Below, one piece after another: positions 12,756 through 56,195 of a DNA stretch of 64,000 nucleotides (its first letter is position 1; every line of letters begins with the position of its first letter). A program made the translations under genes and the position numbers. The notes beneath the pieces were generated by a model, which ran no database searches, had not been told where the DNA came from, and was given only the letters and a program-made list of their open reading frames with translations. The stretch is from sequence record LT603033.1; one strand, written 5' to 3'.

Positions 12756-12756
12756 C

Positions 12757-12945: not shown

Positions 12946-12954
12946 GAGAACAAT

Positions 12955-13140: not shown

Positions 13141-13141
13141 T

Positions 13142-13327: not shown

Positions 13328-13332
13328 CTAAT

Positions 13333-13723: not shown

Positions 13724-13724
13724 T

Positions 13725-13907: not shown

Positions 13908-13922
13908 TTAATAGAGAATACT

Positions 13923-23591: not shown

Positions 23592-23627
23592 AAAGTGGTT
23601 GACTTCGGTCAGCCATTTTGCTATTAT
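23592..23627 (+). promoter_or_regulatory. composite terminator hairpin / promoter
   Basis: AAAAGTGGTTGAC-TTCG-GTCAGCCATTTT hairpin contains -35 TTGACT, then 17 nt to TATTAT. Confidence 0.7.
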
Positions 23628-23633
23628 ATATTC

Positions 23634-27188: not shown

Positions 27189-27240
27189 AAATAATTGAAA
27201 AAGGGATTGACTCCGGTCAGTCCCTTTGCTATTATATACG

Positions 27241-32721: not shown

Positions 32722-32776
32722 CAAAAAAGAATAAAAAAGGGATTGACTCCGGTCAGTCCCTTTGCTATTATATACG

Positions 32777-33856: not shown

Positions 33857-34066
33857 ATGTTCTATACAGTATACAGCGTTCTAGGTACTATTGCAGGCGT
33901 ACATGATAACGTCAATGATGCTATGCGTACAGTACTGCAACAGGTTCCACTAAAGCCTAAGACCATTAAGCAGATGACAGCACGACTAACCAGGGCGACC
34001 GATGGCGTGGAAGTATGGCAGGACTACGGGGATACACAGATAATCGTTAGCGTAACGAAGGATTAA
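33857..34066 (+). CDS. hypothetical protein
   Basis: AGGAGG RBS. Confidence 0.7.
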   Translation: MFYTVYSVLGTIAGVHDNVNDAMRTVLQQVPLKPKTIKQMTARLTRATDGVEVWQDYGDTQIIVSVTKD

Positions 34067-34257
34067 TGCGTAAAGGGATCTAGTACTGATTCAGAAAAAA
34101 GTCAAGGCGTTTTTAAAATTATGCGTTAAAAAAATGCATAGGTAATCCCTTGACTTTTTTGAAATAAAAGGGATTGGACTATGGCAAAATGCGTAGGGGG
34201 CTAAAGGGCGGGTAACCTTAGCGACTTCGATAAAGGGGTATTACGAATAAAATGTTA

Positions 34258-34285
34258 TTGACTTTTTATATGAATCGTATAAAAT
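34258..34285 (+). promoter_or_regulatory. sigma70 promoter for the family B operon
   Basis: TTGACT-16-TAAAAT. Confidence 0.6.
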
Positions 34286-34315
34286 ATGATTGATATTAAT
34301 TTTAAGGGAGTCCCT

Positions 34316-34513
34316 ATGCGTATTTTAACTAAAGAACAGCACCACGAAAGACTTATCAATAACATGGCTATGATAATGTATAAGTCCCATGACCGTGGTA
34401 TTGCCTATAAGCGTGAATTAATTATGGCACTATTCATTGGAACTAACTTTCAGGAAAGGTATGTCAACGATTGGATTTGGTATTTAATTGAAGATATAAC
34501 GAGTAAACTATGA
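34316..34513 (+). CDS. family B protein
   Basis: GTNFQE. Confidence 0.8.
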   Translation: MRILTKEQHHERLINNMAMIMYKSHDRGIAYKRELIMALFIGTNFQERYVNDWIWYLIEDITSKL

Positions 34514-34710
34514 AAATGCGTATTTTAAATAAAGAAGAATATCAATCACTGTTACGTAAAAACTACGTAAAGATTTACAACACAGACACACATGTAGAAC
34601 GAATGGAGTTATACCTTTTGATTACATTGGGAACAAACTATCAGGGTAGATGGGTGTGGCAATATATGGATACATTGAAAAATAAAATATTGTCCACGAG
34701 GAAACAATGA
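34510..34710 (+). CDS. family B protein
   Basis: GTNYQG. Confidence 0.8.
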   Translation: MKMRILNKEEYQSLLRKNYVKIYNTDTHVERMELYLLITLGTNYQGRWVWQYMDTLKNKILSTRKQ

Positions 34711-34916
34711 AAACTATAACACGAACCCAATCATACGGTCTTATCTTGAAATACATGGACTTAATGGTGGATATCAGCAAAGACCTGCCTAAAACTGAAA
34801 TTGAAGTTGCAAGAGCAGAGATCCGCATGTTGGCTGTACTGAACACAAACCATCAGGAAGATTATGTTGAAGAATGGATTCGATTTTTAATAGAAGATAT
34901 TAAGAGTAAAATATGA
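34707..34916 (+). CDS. family B protein
   Basis: NTNHQE. Confidence 0.8.
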   Translation: MKTITRTQSYGLILKYMDLMVDISKDLPKTEIEVARAEIRMLAVLNTNHQEDYVEEWIRFLIEDIKSKI

Positions 34917-35128
34917 TTATTATAGAAAACTCATATCAATATACTGAACGCATCGCTGCCAGACAACTTGAAATCCTCATAATATACGAAGAGACGTCTG
35001 ATTTAAACTTAGCCGAGGTATTGGAAAATGAAATACTTTTGGGTGCATTCTTGGGAACAGACTATCAGGAGTATTATGAGGAAAAGTATTTGTCATCTCT
35101 TGAGAAATACATCAGGAGCAAATTATGA
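34913..35128 (+). CDS. family B protein
   Basis: GTDYQE. Confidence 0.8.
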   Translation: MIIIENSYQYTERIAARQLEILIIYEETSDLNLAEVLENEILLGAFLGTDYQEYYEEKYLSSLEKYIRSKL

Positions 35129-35337
35129 TTATATTAACACCTGAAGAATATAAGAAACGTTTTAATTCTGTCCAGACTGAAATATTACTTATATACCTTT
35201 CAAATGCAGACCTTAACTTATCAAGGGCAATGGAGAAGGATTTACTTATGGGTGCATTTTTGGATACAGACTTTCAGGAGTATTATGTAGGGAAATACTT
35301 AATTGAACTTCAGAACTACATTAAGAGTAAACTATGA
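35125..35337 (+). CDS. family B protein
   Basis: DTDFQE. Confidence 0.8.
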   Translation: MIILTPEEYKKRFNSVQTEILLIYLSNADLNLSRAMEKDLLMGAFLDTDFQEYYVGKYLIELQNYIKSKL

Positions 35338-35561
35338 AACATTTAAGTAATATTGAGAAGATGAGAATTATCATTGATGCATTAAACAAATACGATACCC
35401 TTTTACAAATAAAAGGTTTAACTCGATTGGAACACAAGATAAACACCACCGATGTACGCATGTTGGCTGTACTGGGGACGAACTTCCAGGAAGAGTATGT
35501 TATTGCACACATAGTTGCACTCAAGAATTACATTATGGACAAATGTAATGAACATCATTAA
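35334..35561 (+). CDS. family B protein
   Basis: GTNFQE. Confidence 0.8.
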   Translation: MKHLSNIEKMRIIIDALNKYDTLLQIKGLTRLEHKINTTDVRMLAVLGTNFQEEYVIAHIVALKNYIMDKCNEHH

Positions 35562-35772
35562 TAACTTTGAATACGAGGCCCGTGCTAAGAGTGCCAGAAA
35601 AAAAGAGAACACCATTTACTTCACTATGATGTACTTACAATGGACTGAAATTGAAGAAAAGGTTGCTGAAGTATGGATGTTGGAATTCATGGGGACGCAG
35701 TATCAGAATAGGTTTGCGGGTGAGTATATCGATGTTCTTATGAAACAAATAGAAAGAAAGGAAAAGAACTAA
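35548..35772 (+). CDS. family B protein
   Basis: GTQYQN. Confidence 0.8.
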   Translation: MNIINNFEYEARAKSARKKENTIYFTMMYLQWTEIEEKVAEVWMLEFMGTQYQNRFAGEYIDVLMKQIERKEKN

Positions 35773-35930
35773 TGGTTTTCATTAACATATCTGACCAACT
35801 CGATACTAAACTAGAAGTCGAGCAGAGTGAGGGATGGATGCTGTACTTTCTTGGAACTTCTCATCAAAATTTTTATATCCATGAACACATAGTTGCACTC
35901 ACAAATCTAATAAGGGATAAATGTAAATGA
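35772..35930 (+). CDS. family B protein (short, 52 aa)
   Basis: GTSHQN; TAATG overlap; not in track. Confidence 0.7.
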   Translation: MVFINISDQLDTKLEVEQSEGWMLYFLGTSHQNFYIHEHIVALTNLIRDKCK

Positions 35931-36184
35931 AACACTTGACGGACGATGAATATTCACTTAGAATTCGAAAGCTCACCCCAGAAGCAAGAGTAATCTACGA
36001 TGACGATGCACTTTCATGGAACGAGATGAAAGTTAAAGTTCATGAGCTATGGTTGCTGTACTTTGTGGGAACCCAATATCAAGAGAAATATTGTACCGAT
36101 TATCTTGAACAACTAATGGATTTTATACAGATAAAACTAAATGAACGAATTGTGGAAAAATATGAAAACTTTATCAAGCACTGA
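35927..36184 (+). CDS. family B protein
   Basis: GTQYQE. Confidence 0.8.
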   Translation: MKHLTDDEYSLRIRKLTPEARVIYDDDALSWNEMKVKVHELWLLYFVGTQYQEKYCTDYLEQLMDFIQIKLNERIVEKYENFIKH

Positions 36185-36413
36185 GTATCAGACTGCCCTC
36201 TTCTCTCTTCTAAACACCCTTCGCACTAACAATAAACTTTATAATTCCCGTGAAGCTGATATCGTCAACGCTGATGTATATCTTAATAAATTCATAGGGA
36301 CTAACTATCAAGAACTGTTCACTCTACGATATATCTCTGCATTGAGAAACGAAATATCAGATAAAACCCGCCAAGCCAGAAGAGAATGGAATAAACAATG
36401 CGACAAAGACTAA
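36162..36413 (+). CDS. family B protein
   Basis: GTNYQE. Confidence 0.8.
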   Translation: MKTLSSTEYQTALFSLLNTLRTNNKLYNSREADIVNADVYLNKFIGTNYQELFTLRYISALRNEISDKTRQARREWNKQCDKD

Positions 36414-36646
36414 ATCACAAAATGTATTGTAAACTATTGCAGACACTGGCACAGAAACACTATGACACGGTATCTGAAATATTACCCTATGATATCATGC
36501 GTTTACTTCACTGTGAAGCCGAGATGCTTGTACTGATGACAGGCACTGATAAAACAGCAATCGCCAGATCGATAGAGCAATATATTGATGCACACTACCA
36601 ACACATGAGAACCGAAATCTGGAGGAAAGAGAATGATAATTCTTAA
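36398..36646 (+). CDS. family B protein (divergent)
   Basis: GTDKTA. Confidence 0.75.
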   Translation: MRQRLNHKMYCKLLQTLAQKHYDTVSEILPYDIMRLLHCEAEMLVLMTGTDKTAIARSIEQYIDAHYQHMRTEIWRKENDNS

Positions 36647-36848
36647 TGAGTATCAGTATCATTGGAGGTTACAAACTATCAAATCAAAAGTGTATAGTAT
36701 TGTGTTAAACAAATCTATTGCACAAGAGGACAAATGTGTTATAATAGCTGAAATGAAGTTGGGTGTATTCGTAGGGACAAACTATCAAAACATCTACACT
36801 GACGTATTATTAAGTTCCTTACGTAACAAGGTGGTATCCAAAATATGA
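36633..36848 (+). CDS. family B protein
   Basis: GTNYQN. Confidence 0.8.
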   Translation: MIILNEYQYHWRLQTIKSKVYSIVLNKSIAQEDKCVIIAEMKLGVFVGTNYQNIYTDVLLSSLRNKVVSKI

Positions 36849-37063
36849 GAAATTTACAAGGCTTTGAATACATCAGACTCCTGAAAACATGTGGAAGCAG
36901 AAGGAGAATGATATCAAGCGATAAGAGCATCCAAGCTAACCTTAAGCACGCACTAGTAACTGAACTCTATGTAGGTGCACTCTTAGGCACAAACTATCAA
37001 CAAATGTATGTAGATCTATGGATTGACGCTCTACAGAAAGAGGTTAAAAGTAAATGCAAATGA
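36845..37063 (+). CDS. family B protein
   Basis: GTNYQQ. Confidence 0.8.
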   Translation: MRNLQGFEYIRLLKTCGSRRRMISSDKSIQANLKHALVTELYVGALLGTNYQQMYVDLWIDALQKEVKSKCK

Positions 37064-37272
37064 TTAATTTAAGTAAAGACGAATTTTATGTTATACTGGC
37101 GAAAACTTATCCAGCACGTAAGGCCGTTTATGATAGTCACATTATTGAACCCTCAAAGAAGTTGATTTTAGTAAATGAGATAAAGATGCTTTCAGTCTTA
37201 GGAACAAACTATCAAGAGAATGCTGTACTGATGTTAATTGATGCCCTCCAGCGAGAGGTTAAACGTAAATGA
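37054..37272 (+). CDS. family B protein
   Basis: GTNYQE. Confidence 0.8.
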   Translation: MQMINLSKDEFYVILAKTYPARKAVYDSHIIEPSKKLILVNEIKMLSVLGTNYQENAVLMLIDALQREVKRK

Positions 37273-37499
37273 AAATGATTCATTTAACTTACCATGAATA
37301 TCAAAAACGTTTAAATGCATCCAGAGATATAAGGATTCAAATATTCAATAACAAAAGATTGAAGCCTGATATCAGAAAAATCAAAATTATAGAAGCAGAG
37401 TTATGCAACTTTCTAGGGACCAACTATCAGGCAGGTAAGGTAAAAAACTATCTTAGAGAACTAATGAATAGTATTGAAAATAAATGTAAGGGTAATTAA
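37269..37499 (+). CDS. family B protein
   Basis: GTNYQA. Confidence 0.8.
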   Translation: MKMIHLTYHEYQKRLNASRDIRIQIFNNKRLKPDIRKIKIIEAELCNFLGTNYQAGKVKNYLRELMNSIENKCKGN

Positions 37500-37500
37500 C

Positions 37501-37740
37501 ATGAAAATGATTAAATTATCTCAAGCAAAATATAAAGAACGCCTGGTAAAAATTGCACCTGGACTTAATGAAATCCATCACGGAGAAGTCATTAAACACG
37601 GAAATAAGATGATTATGAAACTTGAGTTAAAGGTGGGTGCATTCATAGGAACAAACTATCAGGAGTATTATGTAGATGAATACATAATCGCACTTAAGAG
37701 ATATATTGGAAGAAAACTATATCTACAAACTAAAGAATAG
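37501..37740 (+). CDS. family B protein
   Basis: GTNYQE. Confidence 0.8.
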   Translation: MKMIKLSQAKYKERLVKIAPGLNEIHHGEVIKHGNKMIMKLELKVGAFIGTNYQEYYVDEYIIALKRYIGRKLYLQTKE

Positions 37741-37769
37741 TATTGAAAATAAATGTGAGGTTGATGAAC

Positions 37770-38033
37770 ATGCAAATGATCAATTTAAGTAAAGATGAAT
37801 ATACCGAGCGTATGACAAAAATTACGCACAAACGTAATACAATCTATCACAACCCAGAAATTCAACACAGTAAGAAAATGATTATGATGCGTGAGTTAAA
37901 GATGGGTGTATTCTTAGGAACAAACTATCAAGATACAGAAGTAAATCGCTTAATCGCGGAGTTACTACTGGAAATCAGAGGTAAGCTGTACTTTCATCAA
38001 ATGACCCAACCACTGAGGTGTACTAAGAAATGA
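37770..38033 (+). CDS. family B protein
   Basis: GTNYQD. Confidence 0.8.
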   Translation: MQMINLSKDEYTERMTKITHKRNTIYHNPEIQHSKKMIMMRELKMGVFLGTNYQDTEVNRLIAELLLEIRGKLYFHQMTQPLRCTKK

Positions 38034-38245
38034 TCAACATCACATTGCAAGAAAGATTCATCCGAATCAACTATGCAATTACCAAATTAGATGCTACTAT
38101 AGGATTCCAAAGTCTACCATACAAAACCAGATTGTTATTAGAGTGTGAAGCTAAGTTGGGTGTACTGTTAGGGACGCAACACCAACAACGATATGTGGAA
38201 ATCTGGATTGACCTTTTAACCCAAAATATATATGAGAGAATGTAA
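38030..38245 (+). CDS. family B protein
   Basis: GTQHQQ. Confidence 0.8.
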   Translation: MINITLQERFIRINYAITKLDATIGFQSLPYKTRLLLECEAKLGVLLGTQHQQRYVEIWIDLLTQNIYERM

Positions 38246-38476
38246 ATGCAAAATGAAATGATATACTTAACGAATGAAGAATTTCAAGAGAAGATGTTAA
38301 AAACCAAAAACATTACTCTTAAGTTCGGTCCAAATCAATCAATATCTGAAGTATCTGCAAATGTATTGTTTCAGAAGCTACCATACGTTCTTGGAACTGA
38401 TAAACAAGAATTTATGGTTCAAAATATGATTGAACATCTTATGATGAGTATTAAGGAAAAAGTAAATGCAAAATGA
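38246..38476 (+). CDS. family B protein
   Basis: GTDKQE. Confidence 0.8.
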   Translation: MQNEMIYLTNEEFQEKMLKTKNITLKFGPNQSISEVSANVLFQKLPYVLGTDKQEFMVQNMIEHLMMSIKEKVNAK

Positions 38477-38720
38477 AATGATATACTTAACCTATAATGA
38501 ATACGTCGAGAGATTAGTTCGTGCCAAGAGATATACCAATAAACGTCCAATTGACCTAAACCAAACCCCAGCAGAAAGGAGTGCAGAAGTATTATTCCAA
38601 TCACTACCATACCTTCTTGGAACTGATAGACAAGAGGAATATGTTGCACGTATGATTAGATATCTTAAAATCACTATTAAGGAAAAAGTAAATGCAAATG
38701 AAATACTTAACAGACGATGA
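38466..38720 (+). CDS. family B protein
   Basis: GTDRQE. Confidence 0.8.
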   Translation: MQNEMIYLTYNEYVERLVRAKRYTNKRPIDLNQTPAERSAEVLFQSLPYLLGTDRQEEYVARMIRYLKITIKEKVNANEILNRR

Positions 38721-38943
38721 GTTAAAAGAACGACTAATTAAATCAAGAAAACATACAAATCAACTTCCAAACGACACAAACAAGTCTCCAGCGGAAAGGA
38801 GTGCAGAAGTTTTATACATTCAACTCATGTACTTTCTTGGCACTGACAGACAAGAGTATTACATTGAAAGTATGCTTCGATATCTTAAATTCTCTATAAA
38901 GGAAAAGATACATGATCAAGTATTTAAAAATCCTAACAGTTAA
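38692..38943 (+). CDS. family B protein
   Basis: GTDRQE. Confidence 0.8.
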   Translation: MQMKYLTDDELKERLIKSRKHTNQLPNDTNKSPAERSAEVLYIQLMYFLGTDRQEYYIESMLRYLKFSIKEKIHDQVFKNPNS

Positions 38944-39154
38944 TGAATATCATAAGATTGTAATGAAAACTAATAGTGATTACGCTAAAAAATCAAACCC
39001 AAAGTACATACTGGAACACACATTTGAAGAACGTCAATTAGCTTTAGTTGAAGCAAAACTTCTTGCACTCCTAGGAACAAACTATCAGGAAGAATACATC
39101 AGAAAACTAATATACCTTTTAACTAAACATATAAGAAAAAGAAAAAATGCATGA
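38912..39154 (+). CDS. family B protein
   Basis: GTNYQE. Confidence 0.8.
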   Translation: MIKYLKILTVNEYHKIVMKTNSDYAKKSNPKYILEHTFEERQLALVEAKLLALLGTNYQEEYIRKLIYLLTKHIRKRKNA

Positions 39155-39381
39155 AACACTTGACAGATGATGAACATGGACTTATAGTAATGGATGTAAT
39201 CAACATCGAATACAAAAAGTTGATACGCTACCGTTGTTATGAAGATAAGCAACTCGTTCTAGCAGAACAGAAGTTGTTTCGACTCTTAAACACAAACTTC
39301 CAAGCACAATACGAAGAATCGTATATGTACCTTTTGGCGAGGAAAGCAAAAAGAGATTATGAAAATTTTAAGCAAAGGTGA
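39151..39381 (+). CDS. family B protein
   Basis: NTNFQA. Confidence 0.8.
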   Translation: MKHLTDDEHGLIVMDVINIEYKKLIRYRCYEDKQLVLAEQKLFRLLNTNFQAQYEESYMYLLARKAKRDYENFKQR

Positions 39382-39580
39382 TTCAGTAATATTACTTATA
39401 GAGAGTTCAAGTAAATTCTTAAACATAACACTGTCTGATATAGATGAAGATGACAAAGAAGTACTGAGAGCAGATTTAAGAGTACTGTTACATATCGGAA
39501 CAAACCTACAAGAAGAATATGTAGAGTGCTACATTAATGAACTTAAAGAATCAGTACTGAGAAAATGCAAATGCAAATGA
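39359..39580 (+). CDS. family B protein
   Basis: GTNLQE. Confidence 0.8.
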   Translation: MKILSKGDSVILLIESSSKFLNITLSDIDEDDKEVLRADLRVLLHIGTNLQEEYVECYINELKESVLRKCKCK

Positions 39581-39804
39581 AAATCATTTCACCCACAGAA
39601 TACAACCAACTATTAAGTAGTTTAATTCTAAAGCTGTTTATAACAAAAAGCATGAAATTACCAGATGATGAAATAAGTATTCTAGTAAGTGAAATCTATG
39701 TTCAAGCTACACTAGGGACTAACTATCAAGAATGCAATATTAATGATTACATCAATGAACTAAAAAGGTTTATCCAATGCAAATGCGAATCATTACCGAA
39801 GTAG
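39565..39804 (+). CDS. family B protein
   Basis: GTNYQE. Confidence 0.8.
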   Translation: MQMQMKIISPTEYNQLLSSLILKLFITKSMKLPDDEISILVSEIYVQATLGTNYQECNINDYINELKRFIQCKCESLPK

Positions 39805-40019
39805 AATACCTAACAATCATAAATGGACTGTTTTCGAAGTTATTTGCCATTAACACATCAAAACTTCCAGATTCTGATAAAATTATTAAGTTAAATGAAA
39901 TCTACGTTCAAGCTACTCTAGGAACAAACTATCAAGAAGCCAATGTGTATAATTACATTAATACACTCAAAAGGGTAATACAATTAAAATGCACAGACAG
40001 CACACACACAAACCCCTAG
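39777..40019 (+). CDS. family B protein
   Basis: GTNYQE. Confidence 0.8.
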   Translation: MQMRIITEVEYLTIINGLFSKLFAINTSKLPDSDKIIKLNEIYVQATLGTNYQEANVYNYINTLKRVIQLKCTDSTHTNP

Positions 40020-40219
40020 GAACAGCAGAATACATTGAACTAATGGCTGCAAACTTCTCATCCTTTAAGAAACTGATGCAAGAATCAAAGAATGATTTAG
40101 AATATCACATCAAAAGTTCAGATTTAAGATTGCTACTCACTCTAGGAACAGATTCCCAAGAGCGATTTGTCAATGAGCATATTAGAGCACTTTTAAATGG
40201 CATCAGGAATAAACTATGA
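39989..40219 (+). CDS. family B protein
   Basis: GTDSQE. Confidence 0.8.
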   Translation: MHRQHTHKPLGTAEYIELMAANFSSFKKLMQESKNDLEYHIKSSDLRLLLTLGTDSQERFVNEHIRALLNGIRNKL

Positions 40220-40431
40220 AGGAAATATCAAATCAAGAGTACTTGGCACTATTCAGGAAGAATAATCACAAATATATGGCACTTGATTCAAGAACTGATA
40301 TAAGTGAACTTGAAAAAAATCTTTTGCGTTCAGAGATGATAGTACTGACACTCTTAGGAACACAGCATCAAGAGAGAACTGTTAATTCACACATAGGGAT
40401 TCTTATGCAGATAGTTCAGGAAAAGATATGA
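40216..40431 (+). CDS. family B protein
   Basis: GTQHQE. Confidence 0.8.
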   Translation: MKEISNQEYLALFRKNNHKYMALDSRTDISELEKNLLRSEMIVLTLLGTQHQERTVNSHIGILMQIVQEKI

Positions 40432-40649
40432 GAATCATAACACAACAAGATATTCTTAAGTTCACAAGGGTTCATGCATCTGAATTTGATGCTATATTAT
40501 CAAAAAGTTACAACAACCCTTATACACAAGATGTACATTACAGTGAATTATGGATGTATATACTTTTAGGTACAAATAAGCAAGAGCAAGCCGTACAGAA
40601 GTATTTGACAGCTTTACGTGATGCTACTGCTAATGGAGTATGTGTTTAA
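40428..40649 (+). CDS. family B protein
   Basis: GTNKQE. Confidence 0.8.
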   Translation: MRIITQQDILKFTRVHASEFDAILSKSYNNPYTQDVHYSELWMYILLGTNKQEQAVQKYLTALRDATANGVCV

Positions 40650-40650
40650 T

Positions 40651-40893
40651 ATGAAAGTACTGACAGAACTAGAAATGTATCATAGATTTAATAAGTACTA
40701 TCATTTACTTAAGCCTATACAGAGGATTAAATGTCCATTTGAAGAGAAACAGGTTTTAATCTATGAGCACAAGTTCTTTGTATCATTAGGTACAGATCAA
40801 CAAGAGTACTATTTGACGTTGTACTTGATTACATTAATAGATTTAATTCACTATAAAACCAAACAAGCTAATAAAGAGAAATATGAAAACTAA
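40651..40893 (+). CDS. family B protein
   Basis: GTDQQE. Confidence 0.8.
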   Translation: MKVLTELEMYHRFNKYYHLLKPIQRIKCPFEEKQVLIYEHKFFVSLGTDQQEYYLTLYLITLIDLIHYKTKQANKEKYEN

Positions 40894-41227
40894 TATACAA
40901 CTCAAGGTATATAAATCATTTGAACATACATATATCAAAAGTAGTCTATGTAGAGATGTAATGGATTACAAGGGTAAGCCATTCACAATTACCTATGATT
41001 CTTATGTTAGTGATTTATATATATCATTTGTTAATTACGAAAATAAAATATACAAGCACGTTGATATTAAAGATTTAAGTACTTTATCACCAGAGGAATA
41101 CTTTCAGGAATCATTAGTATGGGATTTAGAGTTTCCTATGCCATTAGTACATAAGATGATAGTACTAATGAAAGAATCTAAACAGGAGCCTAATGGTGAT
41201 TATGAAGAACACACAGTTGAGTACTGA
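40883..41227 (+). CDS. family C protein
   Basis: LSPEEYFQESLVWD. Confidence 0.8.
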   Translation: MKTNIQLKVYKSFEHTYIKSSLCRDVMDYKGKPFTITYDSYVSDLYISFVNYENKIYKHVDIKDLSTLSPEEYFQESLVWDLEFPMPLVHKMIVLMKESKQEPNGDYEEHTVEY

Positions 41228-41588
41228 TAATATTAAGAGTTATACAAGCTCAAGTACTGTGACAATCGAAGTGAATTCTATTAATGCTGGTAATGCAGTA
41301 GATAAGTTCTTTATTGCTCAAGGGTACAGGAAAGATATTCATCAATATTGTTCAGTATATGGGGAGTACAATAGTACTGAAGATATAATTTATTGGTCAA
41401 CACATCAAGATTATCTAACTAAAATTGGCGTTCCAGATGTTAGTACTTTATCTGAAGAAGAATACTTTCAGTACAGCTTAGTACATGATGTACCTATACC
41501 TTTAGGGTTAATCAAGGGTATACAGGAAGAGGTTCATAAGCTTAAATCCATGAGTAAAGGTACTTTCATTAGAACAGTGCAATACTAG
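41193..41588 (+). CDS. family C protein
   Basis: LSEEEYFQYSLVHD. Confidence 0.8.
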   Translation: MVIMKNTQLSTDNIKSYTSSSTVTIEVNSINAGNAVDKFFIAQGYRKDIHQYCSVYGEYNSTEDIIYWSTHQDYLTKIGVPDVSTLSEEEYFQYSLVHDVPIPLGLIKGIQEEVHKLKSMSKGTFIRTVQY

Positions 41589-41589
41589 C

Positions 41590-41618
41590 TTGACAGTACT
41601 TTTCATTACTGATATAGT
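41590..41618 (+). promoter_or_regulatory. sigma70 promoter, extended -10
   Basis: TTGACA-17-TGaTATAGT. Confidence 0.7.
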
Positions 41619-41649
41619 ACCTGTACGTTAATCATTAGGGTAGAAAATT

Positions 41650-41895
41650 ATGTTAAATTTTTTAAATTTCCTTATCGTCTTGTGTATTGTTCTTGGGATT
41701 GCACCATTTGTATTATATTTCATGGATTCAGATGAAATGCAGAAGATGAATTGCACAAGGACAGGACAGAGTAGAGTAGAGACGATTCTTATGCCTGTTA
41801 CGGTTATTGTTAACAACATGCCCATTACGAACATGGTCCCTACCCTAACGACAACGTACCAGTACTCTTGTGCTGACGGAGAGAGGTGGAGATGA
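41650..41895 (+). CDS. membrane-anchored hypothetical protein
   Basis: N-terminal hydrophobic helix; Cys pair in the soluble part. Confidence 0.7.
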   Translation: MLNFLNFLIVLCIVLGIAPFVLYFMDSDEMQKMNCTRTGQSRVETILMPVTVIVNNMPITNMVPTLTTTYQYSCADGERWR

Positions 41896-42203
41896 AATTT
41901 AATATAGCAAAAACATCTAATATATGTATATTTGGTTATGCCGAAGAGTTGGGTGATATTGACATTCTTTTGTACAAAAAGGATGGTGTTATGCATTTCA
42001 AGTACCAGGATGAAGAGGCAGACAATTATCTTTTACCTAATTTAGTACAAATGCAGGAAGATGAATTATTCCAGTACAGCTTAGTATACGACATTGATAT
42101 TTGCACGATGCCAGTACTAATTAGTATTCAAAAAGTGATGCTCGATATGTATGATAAGCTAATACAAGGTATGTCAGGGAGGATCATTGAAATTGACATA
42201 TAA
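41886..42203 (+). CDS. family C protein
   Basis: MQEDELFQYSLVYD. Confidence 0.8.
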   Translation: MEMKFNIAKTSNICIFGYAEELGDIDILLYKKDGVMHFKYQDEEADNYLLPNLVQMQEDELFQYSLVYDIDICTMPVLISIQKVMLDMYDKLIQGMSGRIIEIDI

Positions 42204-42399
42204 GAATATACCTAATGCATATGAAATGAAGTACAGGGAGTTTATTAAAAATGTACACACCGATCCTTTTAATATCAAAATATCAGATTTTGATGTATTA
42301 TTTTATCTAGGGACAATAGCACAGGATCAATGCGTTGATAAGCTCATATGGTCCTTGAAAATGGAGATACAATGCAGACCCAAATATATAAAAAGGTAG
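42187..42399 (+). CDS. family B protein (dispersed)
   Basis: FYLGTIAQD. Confidence 0.75.
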   Translation: MKLTYKNIPNAYEMKYREFIKNVHTDPFNIKISDFDVLFYLGTIAQDQCVDKLIWSLKMEIQCRPKYIKR

Positions 42400-42635
42400 A
42401 TTCTTTATTGTACGCTTCAAAGTACAGGGATTTTTGTTTACGAGGGGGAGAGGAAGATTTCTCTCTGAGATTATCTGAATTTAATATGTTATTTTATCTT
42501 GGTACAAAAGATCAAGAAGATACAGTACAGAAATTTATCAAGCACCTTGAACAAAAAATTCATATGCAAATTTTTATGCTTAAGGTACATAATGAGATAA
42601 ACAAATATGAACCCAACAATAGTACAGGATCTTAA
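42348..42635 (+). CDS. family B protein (dispersed; start uncertain)
   Basis: FYLGTKDQE. Confidence 0.7.
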   Translation: MVLENGDTMQTQIYKKVDSLLYASKYRDFCLRGGEEDFSLRLSEFNMLFYLGTKDQEDTVQKFIKHLEQKIHMQIFMLKVHNEINKYEPNNSTGS

Positions 42636-50160: not shown

Positions 50161-50276
50161 TATTGTGTTTTTCAGAGTACAGTTCATGTTTCCTGAAACA
50201 AAAAATACCCCGCCCCCGCAACGTGCTCCTTATATTGGAGTTTACCTTATTAATTACAGTAGAGATTACAATTGAA

Positions 50277-50660
50277 ATGAAGATGCAAATAAAATATAAT
50301 GAATTTTGTGCAAGGACATGGATGTACACTGGTGAGTTAGTTACGCACTGTAACTTATACAAGGGTGATTTAAACTACGCCAGGGACAAGATTTTAAAGT
50401 ACTGGAATGCTGACTTTTATTTGATGGATTTTAGTACTGGGTTTCATGGGATATCTATCGAGATGCCGGACTATACAGTACTTGATGATGCTGCACTGTT
50501 TCAGGAGGCATTAGTATTTGATAAGAAGTACATCTGTACATTAGAAGAGATGATTGAATTACAGCGTAGAATTAAATGTATTCACAGGGAATGTATAGAT
50601 ATCTGGTGCAGTACTGGTGAGGCCGATTTATGGAAATTTTTTAATCTAGGAGAAGAGTGA
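50277..50660 (+). CDS. family C protein
   Basis: Start trimmed; LDDAALFQEALVFD. Confidence 0.75.
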   Translation: MKMQIKYNEFCARTWMYTGELVTHCNLYKGDLNYARDKILKYWNADFYLMDFSTGFHGISIEMPDYTVLDDAALFQEALVFDKKYICTLEEMIELQRRIKCIHRECIDIWCSTGEADLWKFFNLGEE

Positions 50661-50821
50661 TGGAATTTGATTTTTTAATATCAGTACATTCTTTTAAGCA
50701 CAGTTATCAGTACTTTTGTAATTTAAACAAAGGTGATTTGATTATGGATACAGATACAGAGGCTGTATACAGTTCTAATATTCTGTACAAATTCAGTACT
50801 AATCTGAAGGAGATTTTATGA
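50660..50821 (+). pseudogene. truncated copy of the 51186 gene 5' end (53-aa ORF)
   Basis: First 27 codons nearly identical to 51186 onward, then unrelated sequence; lacks the family C motif. Confidence 0.65.
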
Positions 50822-51186
50822 AAAAAGAAATTAGAATTCAATTCGGTATGAGGAAAAAAGAGGTCATCTGTACACTGAATCATGCGGACGTGGAAATGGG
50901 TGGTGCATTACAAAAATTCTCACATTTTGTTCTTGTACTATATGAAAATGGGTCTTTTAAAATCTTCACATATGATGATTCAAAAAATTACCGTAATGAT
51001 TTTGTAAATCTTACAGTACTGTCAGAAGAGGAATTCTTTCAGGAAAGTACTGTCTGGAATTTACCAGGAGCACCAATTGAATACGTCCGTGCTACACAGG
51101 TAGAGATGATCAAAACAATGCAGAACTATCCAGAAGATTATATGACTAAGTTTCCTGAATCTTTTAATGTAGAGGTTGAGTACTGA
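50818..51186 (+). CDS. family C protein
   Basis: LSEEEFFQESTVWN. Confidence 0.8.
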   Translation: MKKEIRIQFGMRKKEVICTLNHADVEMGGALQKFSHFVLVLYENGSFKIFTYDDSKNYRNDFVNLTVLSEEEFFQESTVWNLPGAPIEYVRATQVEMIKTMQNYPEDYMTKFPESFNVEVEY

Positions 51187-51542
51187 TGGAATTTGATTTT
51201 TTAATATCAGTACATACTTTCAAGCACAGTTATCAGTACTTTTGTAATTTAAACAAAGGTGATTTAATGCACAGTGCGAATGAGTATATTCATTACACTC
51301 AGGGTAAATTTACATTCATTGATTACAGTTCATTACAGTATCCACACCAAGATATGCCGGACTATACATTAATGGATACCGCAGAACTATTCCAAGAATC
51401 ATTAGTATTTGATAAGAAGTACTTGTGTACATTTGAAGAAGTTATTGCAATACAAAATGAAATGAAAGAGTATGCTGCTTTGCATAAACCCAATGCAAGT
51501 ATTAATCAAGAATACAAATTCAATTTAGGAATTCAAGAATGA
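51186..51542 (+). CDS. family C protein
   Basis: MDTAELFQESLVFD. Confidence 0.8.
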   Translation: MEFDFLISVHTFKHSYQYFCNLNKGDLMHSANEYIHYTQGKFTFIDYSSLQYPHQDMPDYTLMDTAELFQESLVFDKKYLCTFEEVIAIQNEMKEYAALHKPNASINQEYKFNLGIQE

Positions 51543-51898
51543 CATATGATTATTCTATGTACTATTATAAGTTACCTAAAGGATGGGACTTGTGCTGTAA
51601 TCTTATTAAGGGCGACTCGGAACATGAGTTGAGTTTATATATGCATTACAAAGATTCTTGTTTTAAATTTATTCATGTATTACATGATGGCTATGACTAT
51701 GAATCTGAGAGTCTTATAGATTATACAGTACTGGACGATGGTGAACTATTTCAGGAAGCATTAGTGTTTGATAAGAATAAGTACTCCTGTACATTTGAAG
51801 AAATGGTTTCTTTGCAAAATGAAATGAAGAGATTTGAAAAAGAAAACGTATTTAATCCATCCCCATCAAGAACGAATAATTATTATTTCAATATATGA
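51539..51898 (+). CDS. family C protein
   Basis: LDDGELFQEALVFD. Confidence 0.8.
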   Translation: MTYDYSMYYYKLPKGWDLCCNLIKGDSEHELSLYMHYKDSCFKFIHVLHDGYDYESESLIDYTVLDDGELFQEALVFDKNKYSCTFEEMVSLQNEMKRFEKENVFNPSPSRTNNYYFNI

Positions 51899-51907
51899 GA
51901 TTATAAA

Positions 51908-52402
51908 ATGACATTACAGAGTTCATTGGAAAAAGCAAAGAAGATTCATGAGTACATGAATATGGCAAAAGAAGGTTCAGTTTACGGTGTTTTCAAAGAC
52001 ACAAGTACTCAATATTATGTGCCGGATAACCTCCTTTATAATGACTGCTCAGATACAGAAACGTGCGTACTGGATACAGAAACATGCATACTAGATACCG
52101 ACCCTAATGATTATGAATGTTTCATTGATATGCATAATGAGTACATGGTCTATATTAATGATGCAGATATTACCATATACAGTACTGACAGCGATTCCGA
52201 TGACATTATAATTCCGAGTGAAGTACTAGAAGGTCAGTGGGATAGTGAAGAGTATTACTTCCAACAAAGTACTGTTTACGATGATGAAGTACTTGATGTT
52301 ATTATAATTATGTGGTACTTTAAAAGTATTGGTTCTGGGAACTTCTATTTCGATTACAAATACGTAAAGAAAACAGTAGATAACGGTATTAACAGGGGTT
52401 GA
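51908..52402 (+). CDS. family C protein (acidic subfamily)
   Basis: GQWDSEEYYFQQSTVYD. Confidence 0.8.
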   Translation: MTLQSSLEKAKKIHEYMNMAKEGSVYGVFKDTSTQYYVPDNLLYNDCSDTETCVLDTETCILDTDPNDYECFIDMHNEYMVYINDADITIYSTDSDSDDIIIPSEVLEGQWDSEEYYFQQSTVYDDEVLDVIIIMWYFKSIGSGNFYFDYKYVKKTVDNGINRG

Positions 52403-52403
52403 A

Positions 52404-52874
52404 ATGAGTTTAGAAAGAGCATTAGAGATTGCGAAGTTAATTGATTTATGCAGCAAAGAAATTGTAGCAAATTGTCTCAATGGATATCTATTCAAGGAAG
52501 GTAAATCTTATTGTCGAATGAGATACGATGACAGTAGTGAGTACATTCACATGTACGATGAAAACTTAGATTCTTCTGAAACAACACTCAATGGGTGTGA
52601 TGTTAATTTGGAAGATAATTACATGTACTTCTGTCGTGATGCTGATATTTTAATACAAGATTCTGACATTCTAACTGGTGGTGAAGAGAAACATCTTCCG
52701 TATTCAGTACTGGATAATAACTGGGGTAGTGAAGATTACTATTTCCAGCAGAGTACTATATATAATGAAGATATACTTGACAAACTTGTTATTTCTTGGT
52801 ACTTTCATAACACGGATTATAGTAGCTTCTACATAGACTTGGATCTACTAAGAGTACTTAAAGAGGATATATGA
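52404..52874 (+). CDS. family C protein (acidic subfamily)
   Basis: WGSEDYYFQQSTIYN. Confidence 0.8.
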   Translation: MSLERALEIAKLIDLCSKEIVANCLNGYLFKEGKSYCRMRYDDSSEYIHMYDENLDSSETTLNGCDVNLEDNYMYFCRDADILIQDSDILTGGEEKHLPYSVLDNNWGSEDYYFQQSTIYNEDILDKLVISWYFHNTDYSSFYIDLDLLRVLKEDI

Positions 52875-53311
52875 GTTTAGAAAAAGCACTAGAACTAGCC
52901 AACAAAATACATCAGTACCATGATAAAATAAAAAGTGGGTTCTATGCTGATAAAGTACATGCATATGGGAATGAATATTACCTCACTGGAGTAAAGAGAT
53001 ACTCTAATGATATTTTACTTATGGGTCATGATAAAGACAATAATATACAGTACTCTTCATGTAGTCAATATACTAGTTTTATGGTATATATTCCTGGTAC
53101 TAAGATTACTTTTGACACATCAAATACACCTGTTGACTTCGGAGTACTTGATGGCCCGTGGGGTACTGAAGAGTATTACTTCCAACAGAGTCTCATTTTT
53201 AACCAAGAAATGCTTGATTCCTTGGTTGTGTTGTGGTACTTTAAGGAATTGAATTTTGAACCATTCTTTCTTGACTGGGGATCATGTGAGTATTTAATTT
53301 CAGGGGAATAA
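52871..53311 (+). CDS. family C protein (acidic subfamily)
   Basis: WGTEEYYFQQSLIFN. Confidence 0.8.
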   Translation: MSLEKALELANKIHQYHDKIKSGFYADKVHAYGNEYYLTGVKRYSNDILLMGHDKDNNIQYSSCSQYTSFMVYIPGTKITFDTSNTPVDFGVLDGPWGTEEYYFQQSLIFNQEMLDSLVVLWYFKELNFEPFFLDWGSCEYLISGE

Positions 53312-53313
53312 TA

Positions 53314-55297: not shown

Positions 55298-55830
55298 TGA
55301 AAGTTAACATCAATGACTTTGATGCATTACAAGATTTATCAAAAAAGATTCGTATCATCGTACCAGTACTCAAAAAATGTAGTACTGGTTTAATTGATCC
55401 TAGTACTGTTGTTAATGAGAAGTACAATTTTCATCGTGTATTACAGGGTACAGGTGCATTTCAGAAGTGTGATGTACGTGAGAAACACGTAATTGATACA
55501 TCATTGTTTTCTATTGGTGCACCTGTGTCGAATAATTCTATTTTCCTGGATAACGCAGGAAATATTCAACAATTAACATTTAAGAAAAGGAAAAAGAACA
55601 ATAACATTGGTGTATACGCGATGAAGTGGGGTCAACCTGATTTGAAGCGTGAAATTCACATCCCTAAGTACAATTACAATGCATTTGACGAACAGTGTTT
55701 TCAACTATCGTGTACTGACCCTGACTATGCAATCATTCAGTTCTATATGGAATTGCAGATAGCATTTAACAGTAATTTATATATTAACTTGTTGGCGATG
55801 AACATCGATGAAGTATTCAAAAACATTTAA
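55294..55830 (+). CDS. family C protein
   Basis: FDEQCFQLSC. Confidence 0.75.
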   Translation: MMKVNINDFDALQDLSKKIRIIVPVLKKCSTGLIDPSTVVNEKYNFHRVLQGTGAFQKCDVREKHVIDTSLFSIGAPVSNNSIFLDNAGNIQQLTFKKRKKNNNIGVYAMKWGQPDLKREIHIPKYNYNAFDEQCFQLSCTDPDYAIIQFYMELQIAFNSNLYINLLAMNIDEVFKNI

Positions 55831-56026
55831 TCGAATTGAATACATGAGAACTGTGAGTGCAGTGTGGGACATATGGTTCACTACTAAACCAAAAATGGAT
55901 TACCATGACTTTAAGCTCTTGTTCTTCGTTGGCTCTAACAAACAGGATGTTGCAATGAAGGGTTATATTCAGCACTTACAGGAACTAATCCAGAAGAGAA
56001 TATATGAAAATAATAGACCAAAATGA
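55808..56026 (+). CDS. family B protein (dispersed)
   Basis: FFVGSNKQD. Confidence 0.75.
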   Translation: MKYSKTFNRIEYMRTVSAVWDIWFTTKPKMDYHDFKLLFFVGSNKQDVAMKGYIQHLQELIQKRIYENNRPK

Positions 56027-56195
56027 CATTGCTAAACTATTCAATATATATTCTACTAGAATGATGCAAACAGACTCATATAGTACTGAATTCAAAGAGT
56101 TGAAAGTCCTGATGTACTTGGGAACCCAATATCAGGAACAAGTTATTTTGGAATATATTAATTCGCTGAAGAAGGATATCCGTTATGTACGATGA
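56004..56195 (+). CDS. family B protein (dispersed)
   Basis: YLGTQYQE. Confidence 0.8.
   Translation: MKIIDQNDIAKLFNIYSTRMMQTDSYSTEFKELKVLMYLGTQYQEQVILEYINSLKKDIRYVR

What the first reader, a model, noticed from the sequence alone, without database searches (positions are those of the whole stretch)
34316..40893. Family B: 30 consecutive ~75-aa paralogs with a GT(N/D/Q)xQE core
Seen: 30 tandem members plus 4 dispersed (42187, 42348, 55808, 56004), nearly all coupled by overlapping stop/start codons. The pattern is helix-variable linker-helix-L(G)T(N/D)YQExY(V/I)-helix. The core is conserved in DNA too (GGAACAAACTATCA(A/G)GA at about 37200, 37648, 37917, 39073, 39921), and recent duplications are visible (identical GTAAATGCAAAATGAAATGATATACTTAAC at about 38242 and 38462). 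Inference: a diversified library of small helical bundles with a constant face and a variable face, consistent with an arms-race inhibitor family or subunits of a hetero-oligomer.
Basis: partly seen in the sequence, partly recalled or inferred. Interest (0 to 1): 0.65.

Follow-up and report, generated by a model that had tools for sequence, protein, structure and literature searches.

The report
Thirty-gene mini-protein array in jumbo phage
A giant E. coli phage carries 30 back-to-back, strongly diverged copies of one tiny helical protein gene right next to its terminal repeat; the array is real and under selection, was noted in one line for a sister phage in 2017, and its function is still unknown, most plausibly early host manipulation.

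Summary
The window is Escherichia phage vB_Eco_slurp01 (Asteriusvirus, 348 kb). Positions 34316-40893 (+) hold 30 consecutive ORFs of 52-87 aa. Four dispersed copies lie at 42193, 42372, 55808 and 56004. These 34 are the only copies in the genome.

33 of 34 match phrog_4148 (function unknown). Pfam, NCBIfam, PADLOC and PDB give nothing. AlphaFold gives a confident four-helix mini-domain (pLDDT 96) with no fold relative outside the family.

The array starts about 100 bp beyond the end of the ~21-kb direct terminal repeat. A sigma-70-like promoter conserved across lineages precedes it, and 25 of 29 junctions overlap.

Orthologues give dN/dS of 0.35-0.42 (flanks 0.14-0.28), so the genes code for protein under relaxed purifying selection. 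No positive selection was detected. Conserved positions are the hydrophobic core and probable helix caps; the rest of the surface varies, and net charge runs from -8 to +9.

Copy number ranges from about 20 to 30 between isolates. The family is confined to Asteriusvirus and Alcyoneusvirus-like phages.

Hua et al. 2017 noted such an array in phage 121Q in one sentence. Best reading, by inference only: an early, non-virion multigene family of host-interaction proteins.

The parts
34169..34240 (.). Conserved non-coding block that contains the end of the ~21-kb direct terminal repeat (boundary maps to about 34218/34219)
   Evidence: The vB_Ec-M-J record annotates its DTR as 1-21525 and its array starts at 21624. 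Alignment of 7 lineages puts that boundary in an almost invariant block.
34258..34285 (+). Sigma-70-like promoter TTGACT-16-TAAAAT, followed by SD GGGAG and the first start codon at 34316
   Evidence: 10/12 match. The -35, -10, SD and start are kept in slurp01, G17, phAPEC6, UB, UE-S1, vB_Ec-M-J and the divergent Turkey5. Activity was not tested.
34316..40893 (+). Whole tandem array: 30 paralogous genes with almost no intergenic DNA, read as one translationally coupled operon that runs on to 41588
   Evidence: No convincing terminator inside. The next strong promoter-like site is at 41590-41618.
34316..34513 (+). member 1 (65 aa)
   Evidence: family HMM 71 bits; annotated PSLUR01_00215
34510..34710 (+). 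member 2 (66 aa)
   Evidence: HMM 70 bits; ATGA overlap
34707..34916 (+). member 3 (69 aa)
   Evidence: HMM 77 bits; ATGA overlap
34913..35128 (+). member 4 (71 aa, net charge -8)
   Evidence: HMM 68 bits; charge; exact unit-length deletion and duplication joints here in run X1
35125..35337 (+). member 5 (70 aa)
   Evidence: HMM 77 bits; 50% identical to member 4
35334..35561 (+). member 6 (75 aa)
   Evidence: HMM 79 bits
35548..35772 (+). member 7 (74 aa)
   Evidence: HMM 77 bits; start refined
35772..35930 (+). member 8 (52 aa, lacks the N-terminal helices)
   Evidence: HMM 58 bits; alignment A1
35927..36184 (+). member 9 (85 aa)
   Evidence: HMM 90 bits; phrog_4148 E 1.3e-23
36162..36413 (+). 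member 10 (83 aa)
   Evidence: HMM 69 bits
36398..36646 (+). member 11 (82 aa; divergent, insertion after GTD and Q replaced by T)
   Evidence: HMM 65 bits; alignment A1
36633..36848 (+). member 12 (71 aa)
   Evidence: HMM 80 bits
36845..37063 (+). member 13 (72 aa)
   Evidence: HMM 85 bits; phrog_4148 E 1.2e-21
37054..37272 (+). member 14 (72 aa)
   Evidence: HMM 81 bits
37269..37499 (+). member 15 (76 aa, net charge +9); the protein that was folded
   Evidence: HMM 90 bits; AlphaFold pLDDT 96.4
37501..37740 (+). member 16 (79 aa)
   Evidence: HMM 90 bits; phrog_4148 E 9.3e-27
37770..38033 (+). member 17 (87 aa)
   Evidence: HMM 86 bits; 226-nt direct repeat with member 16
38030..38245 (+). 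member 18 (71 aa)
   Evidence: HMM 72 bits
38246..38476 (+). member 19 (76 aa)
   Evidence: HMM 74 bits; 55% identical to member 20; shares the 30-mer at its start; no reciprocal-best orthologue in PBECO4, UB or vB_Ec-M-J
38466..38720 (+). member 20 (84 aa)
   Evidence: HMM 79 bits
38692..38943 (+). member 21 (83 aa)
   Evidence: HMM 86 bits; phrog_4148 E 2.5e-23
38912..39154 (+). member 22 (80 aa)
   Evidence: HMM 69 bits
39151..39381 (+). member 23 (76 aa; N instead of G in the core)
   Evidence: HMM 63 bits
39359..39580 (+). member 24 (73 aa)
   Evidence: HMM 78 bits
39571..39804 (+). member 25 (77 aa)
   Evidence: HMM 88 bits; phrog_4148 E 1.3e-17
39777..40019 (+). member 26 (80 aa)
   Evidence: HMM 85 bits; 53% identical to member 25
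39989..40219 (+). member 27 (76 aa); not annotated in the GenBank record
   Evidence: HMM 74 bits; gap in annotation between PSLUR01_00240 and 00241
40216..40431 (+). member 28 (71 aa)
   Evidence: HMM 74 bits
40428..40649 (+). member 29 (73 aa)
   Evidence: HMM 75 bits
40651..40893 (+). member 30 (80 aa)
   Evidence: HMM 75 bits
42193..42399 (+). dispersed member (68 aa)
   Evidence: HMM E 1.4e-7
42372..42635 (+). dispersed member (87 aa)
   Evidence: HMM E 5.8e-8; phrog_4148 E 6.1e-5
55808..56026 (+). dispersed member (72 aa; GS instead of GT)
   Evidence: HMM E 6.3e-7
56004..56195 (+). dispersed member (63 aa)
   Evidence: HMM E 6.5e-12; phrog_4148 E 1.2e-16

Best explanation
SHOWN. The stretch is a 6.6-kb operon of 30 anciently diverged paralogs (mean 25% identity) of one orphan four-helix mini-protein of about 75 aa (phrog_4148). 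It lies in the jumbo coliphage vB_Eco_slurp01, in the first unique DNA after the ~21-kb direct terminal repeat. It is transcribed in the same inward direction as the repeat's small, promoter-rich genes. A conserved sigma-70-like promoter stands in front of it, and overlapping stop and start codons couple the genes. The genes are under purifying selection that is relaxed on the variable, mostly polar positions. Each paralog is kept as a distinct orthologue across lineages. Copies are gained, lost and swapped between isolates in unit-length steps.

INFERRED. The host RNA polymerase transcribes the operon early. Its products stay in the cytoplasm and are not virion parts. They act as a multigene family of host-interaction proteins (host takeover or counter-defence). 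One stable scaffold presents about 30 different surfaces, so each paralog would bind its own host, or rival-phage, target. Tandem duplication with unequal recombination supplies new variants.
For: Identity and context:
- The window is 100% identical to LT603033.
- The DTR of vB_Ec-M-J ends about 100 bp before its array. DTRs of about 21 kb were determined by restriction digests or PhageTerm in relatives (PMC13070987, PMC11895373).
- The DTR-equivalent region is enriched in consensus promoters: 107 found against 75 expected, nine of them perfect.
- The array's promoter, SD and start are conserved in 7 lineages.

Coupling.

Coding and selection:
- Pooled dN/dS is 0.35-0.42 against 0.14-0.28 for flanking genes.
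- Conserved columns give omega 0.20 and variable columns 0.46.

Fold: pLDDT 96.4, pTM 0.80.

Surface diversity: pI runs from 4.3 to 9.9.

Paralogs kept as orthologues: 30 of 32 slurp01 members have a closer match in UE-S1 or vB_Ec-M-J than in their own genome. The same holds for 17 of 20 Turkey5 members against slurp01, in roughly collinear order.

Turnover:
- Copy number at the locus is about 20 to 30.
- Adjacent copies are more alike than distant ones (0.31 vs 0.25; none of 10,000 permutations reached it).
- Unit-length deletion and duplication joints appear in contigs of public runs.

Not virion: no gp46x-gp48x appears among the 62 virion proteins of phAPEC6 (PMC7247149).

Same layout, spaced small genes followed by a tight array, in an unclassified 101-kb metagenome contig.
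Against: - There is no direct evidence of transcription timing, translation or any binding partner.
- Wastewater metatranscriptome contigs carry fragments but cannot prove transcription.
- No similarity to any known anti-defence, takeover or other characterised protein was found.
- No site shows dN above dS, which weakens a classical arms-race reading.
- Synonymous divergence from Turkey5 is also much higher in the array (dS 0.85) than in the flanks (0.23). The array's divergence therefore reflects old alleles and mosaic history as much as fast protein evolution.
- Tight equimolar coupling would fit a multi-subunit complex equally well.
Confidence: 0.42

Rival explanations
1. The 30 proteins are subunits of one hetero-oligomeric or self-assembling intracellular structure. 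Translational coupling would serve to produce them in fixed ratios.
For: Twenty-five of 29 junctions overlap, which favours equimolar synthesis. Net charges range from -8 to +9, which could allow complementary pairing. All members share one scaffold.
Against: Copy number and member content differ between viable isolates (about 20 to 30). Single members are lost or replaced by alleles of 50-70% identity, which is hard to reconcile with an obligate stoichiometric assembly. RaK2 carries only small clusters of 1-3 members. The complex prediction could not be run, so there is no structural test either way.
Confidence: 0.15
2. The array is largely redundant, near-neutral 'filler'. Tandem duplication would have fixed it as the genome grew into a larger capsid, the ratchet idea of Hua et al. 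2017, and the individual copies would have little function of their own.
For: Hua et al. read the >30-gene array they reported in 121Q, probably this one, as genome expansion by tandem duplication (PMC5646251). Constraint is relaxed relative to flanking genes. Copy number varies. No positive selection was detected.
Against: All 30 frames are intact in an AT-rich genome. dN/dS stays well below 1 even at dS 0.26-0.85. Each paralog persists as a recognisable orthologue across lineages instead of decaying or homogenising. The core and turn positions have pN at or below 0.02. An array is present in every Asteriusvirus record with a match (36 records).
Confidence: 0.15
3. The proteins are small nucleic-acid-binding regulators, in the manner of HTH or ribbon-helix-helix proteins, that tune phage or host transcription or translation.
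For: The layout resembles such proteins on the surface: an N-terminal extended segment, helices, and a G-T/S-x turn before a long helix (my reading). About half of the members are basic. Phage G has an expansion of about 35 copies of a zinc ribbon that was proposed to act as transcription factors (PMC7824862).
Against: No HTH or RHH protein appears among significant fold or sequence matches. Twelve of 34 members have zero or negative net charge, down to -8. The conserved residues are core and cap positions, not a basic surface.
Confidence: 0.08
4. The ORFs are not translated, and the periodic pattern is a DNA-level or RNA-level repeat.
For: None beyond the absence of direct proteomic data.
Against: dN/dS is below 1, with the strongest constraint on hydrophobic core columns. 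SD-like motifs precede the starts. A confident, family-consistent fold comes from the paralog alignment. Nucleotide repeats are only 60-87% identical while the protein pattern is kept.
Confidence: 0.02

Closest known systems
[quoted passage not shown] 2017, mBio, PMC5646251; repeated in the 2026 review PMC13282480)
   Same: Same genus. 121Q carries the same family at the same kind of locus: 27 profile matches, 23 of them tandem at 155736-160754. 121Q proteins are the structural matches in BFVD. It is very probably the same array.
   Different: The paper gives one sentence, with no family definition, context, structure or selection analysis. 'Very similar' does not describe it well, since paralogs here average 25% identity. 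I could not confirm from the text which 121Q genes the authors meant.
phrog_4148 (with phrog_28039), PHROGs families of unknown function
   Same: 33 of 34 members match phrog_4148 at up to E 9.3e-27, and 11 also match phrog_28039.
   Different: The catalogue entry carries no function, structure or note on the tandem organisation.
Host-takeover / pre-early modules in or beside terminal repeats of large virulent phages (SPO1 terminal-redundancy module, T5 pre-early region; from my own knowledge, not tested here)
   Same: Many small genes of unknown function at a genome end, oriented inward and preceded by strong host-type promoters.
   Different: Those modules are sets of unrelated genes, each with its own promoter. 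Here one promoter-like site precedes 30 paralogs of a single fold, coupled as one operon. The array lies just outside the repeat, not inside it. Early timing is not shown.
Lineage-specific expansions in large viruses: the ~35-copy zinc ribbon of phage G (PMC7824862), poxvirus genomic accordions (cited in PMC13359090) and ASFV multigene families near genome ends (from my own knowledge, not tested here)
   Same: Tandem paralogs near a genome terminus, copy-number change between isolates, and unit-length recombination.
   Different: The copies are old and individually conserved, not recent amplifications of one gene. No positive selection was detected. The fold is unrelated to those families.

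Membership tests
phrog_4148 (PHROGs, unknown function) | Significant match to the family HMM over most of its length | tested here: met
   33 of 34 members match at E<=0.001, best 9.3e-27, covering profile positions 1-72 of 74
Any Pfam / NCBIfam / PADLOC family | A match shared by several members, at or near the curated threshold | tested here: not met
   Only single-member hits far below cut-offs
Terminal host-takeover / early gene module | Position in or next to the terminal repeat, oriented inward | tested here: met
   The array starts about 100 bp after the DTR end in vB_Ec-M-J, and the boundary maps to window ~34219
Terminal host-takeover / early gene module | Host sigma-70-type promoter upstream | tested here: met
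   TTGACT-16-TAAAAT at 34258-34285, conserved in 7 lineages. This is a sequence match only; activity was not measured
Terminal host-takeover / early gene module | Early transcription and an effect on host macromolecular synthesis | not testable with these tools
   Only assembled contigs of metatranscriptomes were available, and they cannot show timing or even transcription
Viral multigene family evolving by tandem duplication (accordion-like) | Tandem paralogs, neighbours more alike, copy number varying between isolates | tested here: met
   Adjacent identity 0.31 vs 0.25 overall, reached by none of 10,000 permutations. Copy number is about 20 to 30. Unit-length joints were seen
Arms-race (positively selected) inhibitor family | dN/dS above 1 at surface sites between orthologues | tested here: not met
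   Family omega 0.35-0.42. Variable columns give 0.46. No column has pN above the pooled pS of 0.137. Pairwise counts have low power for single sites
Virion / structural proteins | Detection in purified particles | tested here: not met
   No gp46x-gp48x among the 62 virion proteins of phAPEC6 (PMC7247149). Small proteins can escape MS
HTH or ribbon-helix-helix DNA-binding proteins | Fold or profile similarity to solved members, and a consistently basic surface | tested here: not met
   No such match. Net charge ranges from -8 to +9
Acb2 / Vs.4-type cyclic-nucleotide sponge | Significant structural match to T4 Vs.4 | tested here: not met
   7uq2_B appears only at E 4.6, probability 0.16, rmsd 17 A
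Hetero-oligomer subunits | Predicted or measured binding between members | not tested

The most novel reading that the evidence does not exclude
The array would be a germline-encoded repertoire of about 30 co-expressed binders built on one orphan four-helix scaffold. Each surface would be tuned to a different host defence or takeover target, and unequal recombination next to the terminal repeat would renew the set. That would be a phage counterpart of the multigene immune-evasion families of large eukaryotic viruses. The GTNxQE loop could dock all members onto one shared partner.
Probability: 0.18. Interest if true: 0.8.

Novelty: new member of a known kind. Interest (0 to 1): 0.5.

Why it matters
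Most genes of jumbo phages have no known function, and how they take over the host is largely unexplored outside the phiKZ group. This array is about 2% of the genome and was found in every Asteriusvirus record that gave a match. It is kept gene by gene under selection, and it sits where host-takeover genes lie in other large phages.

If the products are host-interaction proteins, the array offers 30 natural variants of one very small, confidently predicted scaffold. That is a compact system for finding new phage-host interfaces or counter-defence activities. It would also let one study how tandem duplication builds viral gene repertoires.

If the array proves dispensable, it would instead support the idea that jumbo genomes are partly filled by duplication.

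Tried and rejected
- Pfam, NCBIfam and PADLOC scans of all 34 members gave only singleton noise.
- A profile search of PDB sequences gave nothing below E 4.
- ESM Atlas gave a best score of 0.76, below a usable level, and holds no model of the protein.
- Foldseek against PDB found no match at E<=0.001.
- VIA-align against 48,161 chains gave a best Z of 7.1, on generic helical hairpins and membrane three-helix subunits. That is within the background for helical models, and the proteins are hydrophilic.
- BFVD returned only the family itself.
- The profile search of 1.84 billion representatives found 102 proteins. All are small single-domain proteins except one 269-aa fusion.
- That fusion (P0218, in UB-like phages) was followed as a guilt-by-fusion lead. 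Its C-terminal 200 aa have no relative in the word search, no Pfam family and no match in this window. The single-sequence fold failed at pLDDT 33.
- hhalign against the neighbouring ~60-aa 'MHKEYY' family showed no relation.
- Read laying returned only assembled contigs. Wastewater RNA libraries hold fragments of relatives, but transcription is not shown.
- No whole genome was held for the window, so the public record was searched instead.
- Literature searches for transcriptomics of Asteriusvirus found nothing relevant.
- Profile searches of GAP32, CBB, Munch and fHe-Yen9-04 found no members.

Full report
**Identity of the window.** Window 34000-41000 is 100% identical to Escherichia phage vB_Eco_slurp01 (LT603033.1, record 96000-103000). 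This is a 348-kb jumbo myovirus of the genus Asteriusvirus, species PBECO4. Window coordinate equals record coordinate minus 62000. All genes of the array are annotated 'hypothetical protein'. No whole genome was held for the window, so I searched the public record through its locus handle.

**Check of the observation.** Thirty consecutive + strand ORFs fill 34316-40893.
- An HMM built from them recovers four more in the window: 56004 (E 6.5e-12), 42348, 42187 and 55808 (E about 1e-7). The next hit has E 0.38.
- A profile search of the whole phage record finds the same 34 places and nothing else.
- The independent PHROGs model phrog_4148 matches 33 of 34.
- In the alignment (A1) the mean pairwise identity of the 30 is 25%, with a maximum of 55%.
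- The core is G 27/30, T 30/30, N/D/Q 29/30, Q 29/30, E 21/30.
- Both DNA-level statements are exact. The 17-mer occurs five times at the stated places, and the 30-mer occurs at 38242 and 38462. Neither is expected by chance.
- Direct repeats have a period of 206-269 nt at 60-87% identity.
- With start codons chosen by alignment and Shine-Dalgarno context, 25 of 29 internal junctions overlap (12 are ATGA), one abuts, and three have gaps of 1, 29 and 1 nt.
- The ORF 39989-40219 is a good family member that the GenBank record does not annotate.

**Genomic context.**
- In the related phage vB_Ec-M-J the direct terminal repeat is annotated as 1-21525, and the array begins at 21624.
- Terminal repeats of about 21 kb were confirmed by restriction mapping in fEgEco12 and by PhageTerm in Sharanji (PMC13070987, PMC11895373).
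- Aligning the intergenic region of seven lineages places the repeat's end at window ~34218/9, inside an almost invariant non-coding block.
- Forty bases further on lies a sigma-70-like promoter, TTGACT-16-TAAAAT (34258-34285). It is followed by GGGAG and the first start codon at 34316.
- The -35, -10, SD and start are kept in all seven lineages, including the divergent Turkey5, where the surrounding sequence differs.
- The region that corresponds to the repeat (about 12.7-34.2 kb of the window) holds small, spaced genes. It has a clear excess of consensus promoters on the same strand: 107 found against 75 expected, nine of them perfect 12/12.
- Inside the array there is almost no intergenic DNA and no convincing terminator. 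The next strong promoter-like site is at 41590, after two further overlapping genes.
- The array therefore reads as one long, translationally coupled operon, transcribed inward from the genome end directly behind the promoter-rich repeat.
- That the operon is early is an inference. It rests on promoter type, position and analogy with the terminal host-takeover regions of other large virulent phages, which is my own knowledge and not a test made here.

**What the protein is.**
- No Pfam, NCBIfam or PADLOC family is shared by the members.
- The profile finds nothing in PDB sequences, and ESM Atlas gives no usable lead.
- AlphaFold2 on the paralog alignment gives a very confident model for member 15: pLDDT 96.4, pTM 0.80. 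It has a short N-terminal extended segment bridged to residue 51 and helices at 8-17, 19-26, 33-47 and 54-73.
- Foldseek against PDB has no match at E<=0.001.
- The exhaustive VIA-align search peaks at Z 7.1 on generic helical hairpins, within the stated background for helical models.
- BFVD returns only uncharacterised proteins of 121Q, UB, PBECO4 and slurp01, which are the family itself.
- The proteins are hydrophilic. Their pI runs from 4.3 to 9.9 and their net charge from -8 to +9.

**Where the conservation lies.** Of the 26 columns I took as conserved between paralogs, 17 are hydrophobic.
- Their spacing is i, i+3/4, i+7 along helices 3 and 4 (alignment columns 45, 52, 55/56; then 71/72, 75/76, 79, 83). 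That is the pattern of a single buried stripe.
- The conserved polar residues fit structural roles. T7-x-x-E10 sits at the start of helix 1, a capping-box pattern. G50 ends helix 3. T51 makes the bridge to residue 4. N52-x-x-E55 sits at the start of helix 4.
- K72 lies in A/G-rich codons that are also the Shine-Dalgarno region of the next gene.
- The cap assignments are my reading of the pattern. I had no coordinates to compute burial.
- So the 'constant face' is mostly the inside and the joints of the fold, and nearly the whole solvent side varies.
- The near-invariance of T51 and Q54, kept as G-[TS]-x-x-Q-E in distant relatives, is stronger than caps usually need. It may mark a functional loop, which remains open.

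**Selection.** I fetched the homologous locus from seven relatives. I then assigned orthologues by reciprocal best hits and counted substitutions with Nei-Gojobori.
- Pooled dN/dS of the family is 0.35-0.42, at dS from 0.055 to 0.27.
- Flanking genes in the same loci give 0.14-0.28.
- Mapped onto family columns, paralog-conserved columns give omega 0.20 and variable columns 0.46.
- Core positions (L6, E10, Y11, F48, G50, T51, N52, Q54, Y61, L65, I69) have pN at or below 0.022.
- No column has pN above the pooled pS of 0.137.
- The genes are therefore translated and constrained, with relaxed surfaces. Positive selection was not detected, although pairwise counts have little power per site.

**Evolutionary dynamics.** Family members counted in the fetched loci, including a few nearby dispersed copies:

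| Phage | Members counted |
|---|---|
| slurp01 | 32 (30 tandem + 2) |
| G17 | 31 |
| PBECO4 | 31 |
| vB_Ec-M-J | 31 |
| phAPEC6 | 30 |
| UB | 28 |
| UE-S1 | 28 |
| Turkey5 | 20 |

121Q has 27 profile matches in its whole genome, 23 of them tandem.
- Neighbours in the array are more alike than distant members (0.31 vs 0.25; none of 10,000 permutations reached it). This is the mark of local tandem duplication.
- Contigs of public runs show joints that remove or duplicate whole units: a skip of 212 at 34907->35120, a step back of 421, and a skip of 438. Assembly across repeats can create such joints, which is a caveat.
- The expansion itself is old. For 30 of 32 slurp01 members the best match in UE-S1 or vB_Ec-M-J beats the best paralog in slurp01. 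Seventeen of 20 Turkey5 members are closer to a slurp01 paralog than to their own paralogs, in roughly collinear order.
- Divergence is mosaic. Within one genome pair some members are identical while neighbours are only 47-70% identical.
- Against Turkey5, the genes at the end of the repeat are 90-97% identical in protein, while array orthologues are 31-73% identical or unrecognisable.
- Synonymous divergence there is also far higher in the array (dS 0.85 vs 0.23). This points to old alleles shuffled by recombination, not simply faster protein evolution.

**Distribution.**
- tblastn finds the family in 36 phage records, all from Escherichia or Salmonella phages; every one whose taxonomy I read is Asteriusvirus or unclassified.
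- The profile finds 12-13 members in Klebsiella phage RaK2, in clusters of one to three. It finds none in GAP32, CBB, Munch or fHe-Yen9-04.
- The exhaustive profile search of 1.84 billion representatives returns only 102 proteins at E<=0.001. All are 52-122 aa except one 269-aa fusion.
- The distant hits I looked up come from RaK2/K64-1-type Klebsiella phages, JNE01/Turkey5-type coliphages and unnamed metagenome contigs.
- One 101-kb contig has the same layout of spaced small genes followed by a tight array: 12 tandem and 5 dispersed members.

**Prior knowledge.** Hua et al. [quoted passage not shown] A 2026 review repeats this (PMC13282480). 121Q carries this family as its large array, so the existence of the array was very probably already noted. 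I could not confirm from the text which genes were meant. I found no description of its family, context, structure, selection or function. The phAPEC6 virion proteome of 62 proteins lists none of the array's genes (PMC7247149).

**Interpretation.** The anatomy, the coding status, the fold prediction, the selection regime, the turnover and the restricted distribution are all shown. The function is inferred.
- Favoured reading (confidence about 0.4): an early, cytoplasmic multigene family of host-interaction proteins, with one scaffold and many surfaces. It rests on the position and promoter, the non-virion status, the gene-by-gene retention of 30 different surfaces, and the general rule that lineage-specific expansions in large viruses serve host interaction.
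- The hetero-oligomer reading is weakened by viable isolates that differ in member content.
- The 'filler' reading is weakened by purifying selection and the persistence of orthologues.
- A nucleic-acid-binding role is weakened by the charge spread and the lack of any HTH or RHH match.

Noticed in passing
window 1038-9443 (- strand): Seven large paralogous ORFs of 369-433 aa stand in tandem, and an eighth ORF is cut by the window start. The two I scanned match RCC1-repeat / RCC1-like domain models.
   Followed up: partly
window 9957-14123 (+ strand): A second tightly packed array of ~60-80-aa ORFs holds several small paralog groups. One is an 8-member family beginning M(N)HKEYY (alignment A3). 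It is unrelated to the finding's family by hhalign (probability 0.8%).
   Followed up: partly
window ~12700-34219 (+ strand): This region corresponds to the ~21-kb direct terminal repeat of relatives. It holds small, spaced genes with an excess of sigma-70 consensus promoters, nine of them perfect TTGACA-16/17-TATAAT. It also has more terminator-like hairpins than expected (23 vs 12).
   Followed up: partly
window 27200-27237, 32736-32773, 23592-23629: A repeated regulatory cassette: a 12-bp-stem hairpin (AAAGGGATTGACTCCGGTCAGTCCCTTT) that contains a TTGACT -35-like hexamer, followed by GCTATTATAT. Two copies are identical and one is a variant.
   Followed up: no
window 34169-34240: An almost invariant non-coding block spans the mapped end of the terminal repeat. 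It is conserved even in Turkey5, where the neighbouring sequence differs, and is a candidate site for terminus formation.
   Followed up: partly
window 40883-42203, 50163-51898, 57344-58031, 59914-60327: An 11-member paralog family of 54-165 aa follows the array directly and recurs downstream. The three members I scanned match phrog_13866 (unknown function).
   Followed up: partly
window 51908-55297, 59108-59602, 60315-60818: Another 8-member paralog family of 146-167 aa; the one member I scanned (51908-52402) has no Pfam match. The 34-64 kb part of the window consists largely of tandem paralog families.
   Followed up: no
window 39989-40219: A clear family member (74 bits) is not annotated in GenBank record LT603033.
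   Followed up: yes
L023:10184-10993 (phage UB); L027-L029:6001-6810: In UB-like phages a 269-aa gene downstream of the array fuses an N-terminal family domain to an orphan ~200-aa C-terminal part. That part has no relatives and gave no usable fold.
   Followed up: yes
window 41650-41895: A small hydrophobic ORF (81 aa, possibly membrane) lies in the gap after the operon; it was not examined further.
   Followed up: no
   Followed up: no
L031:5375-5626 (metagenome contig, 101 kb): In an unclassified relative, one of the spaced small genes upstream of its array carries a precomputed ParE_like Pfam hit.
   Followed up: no
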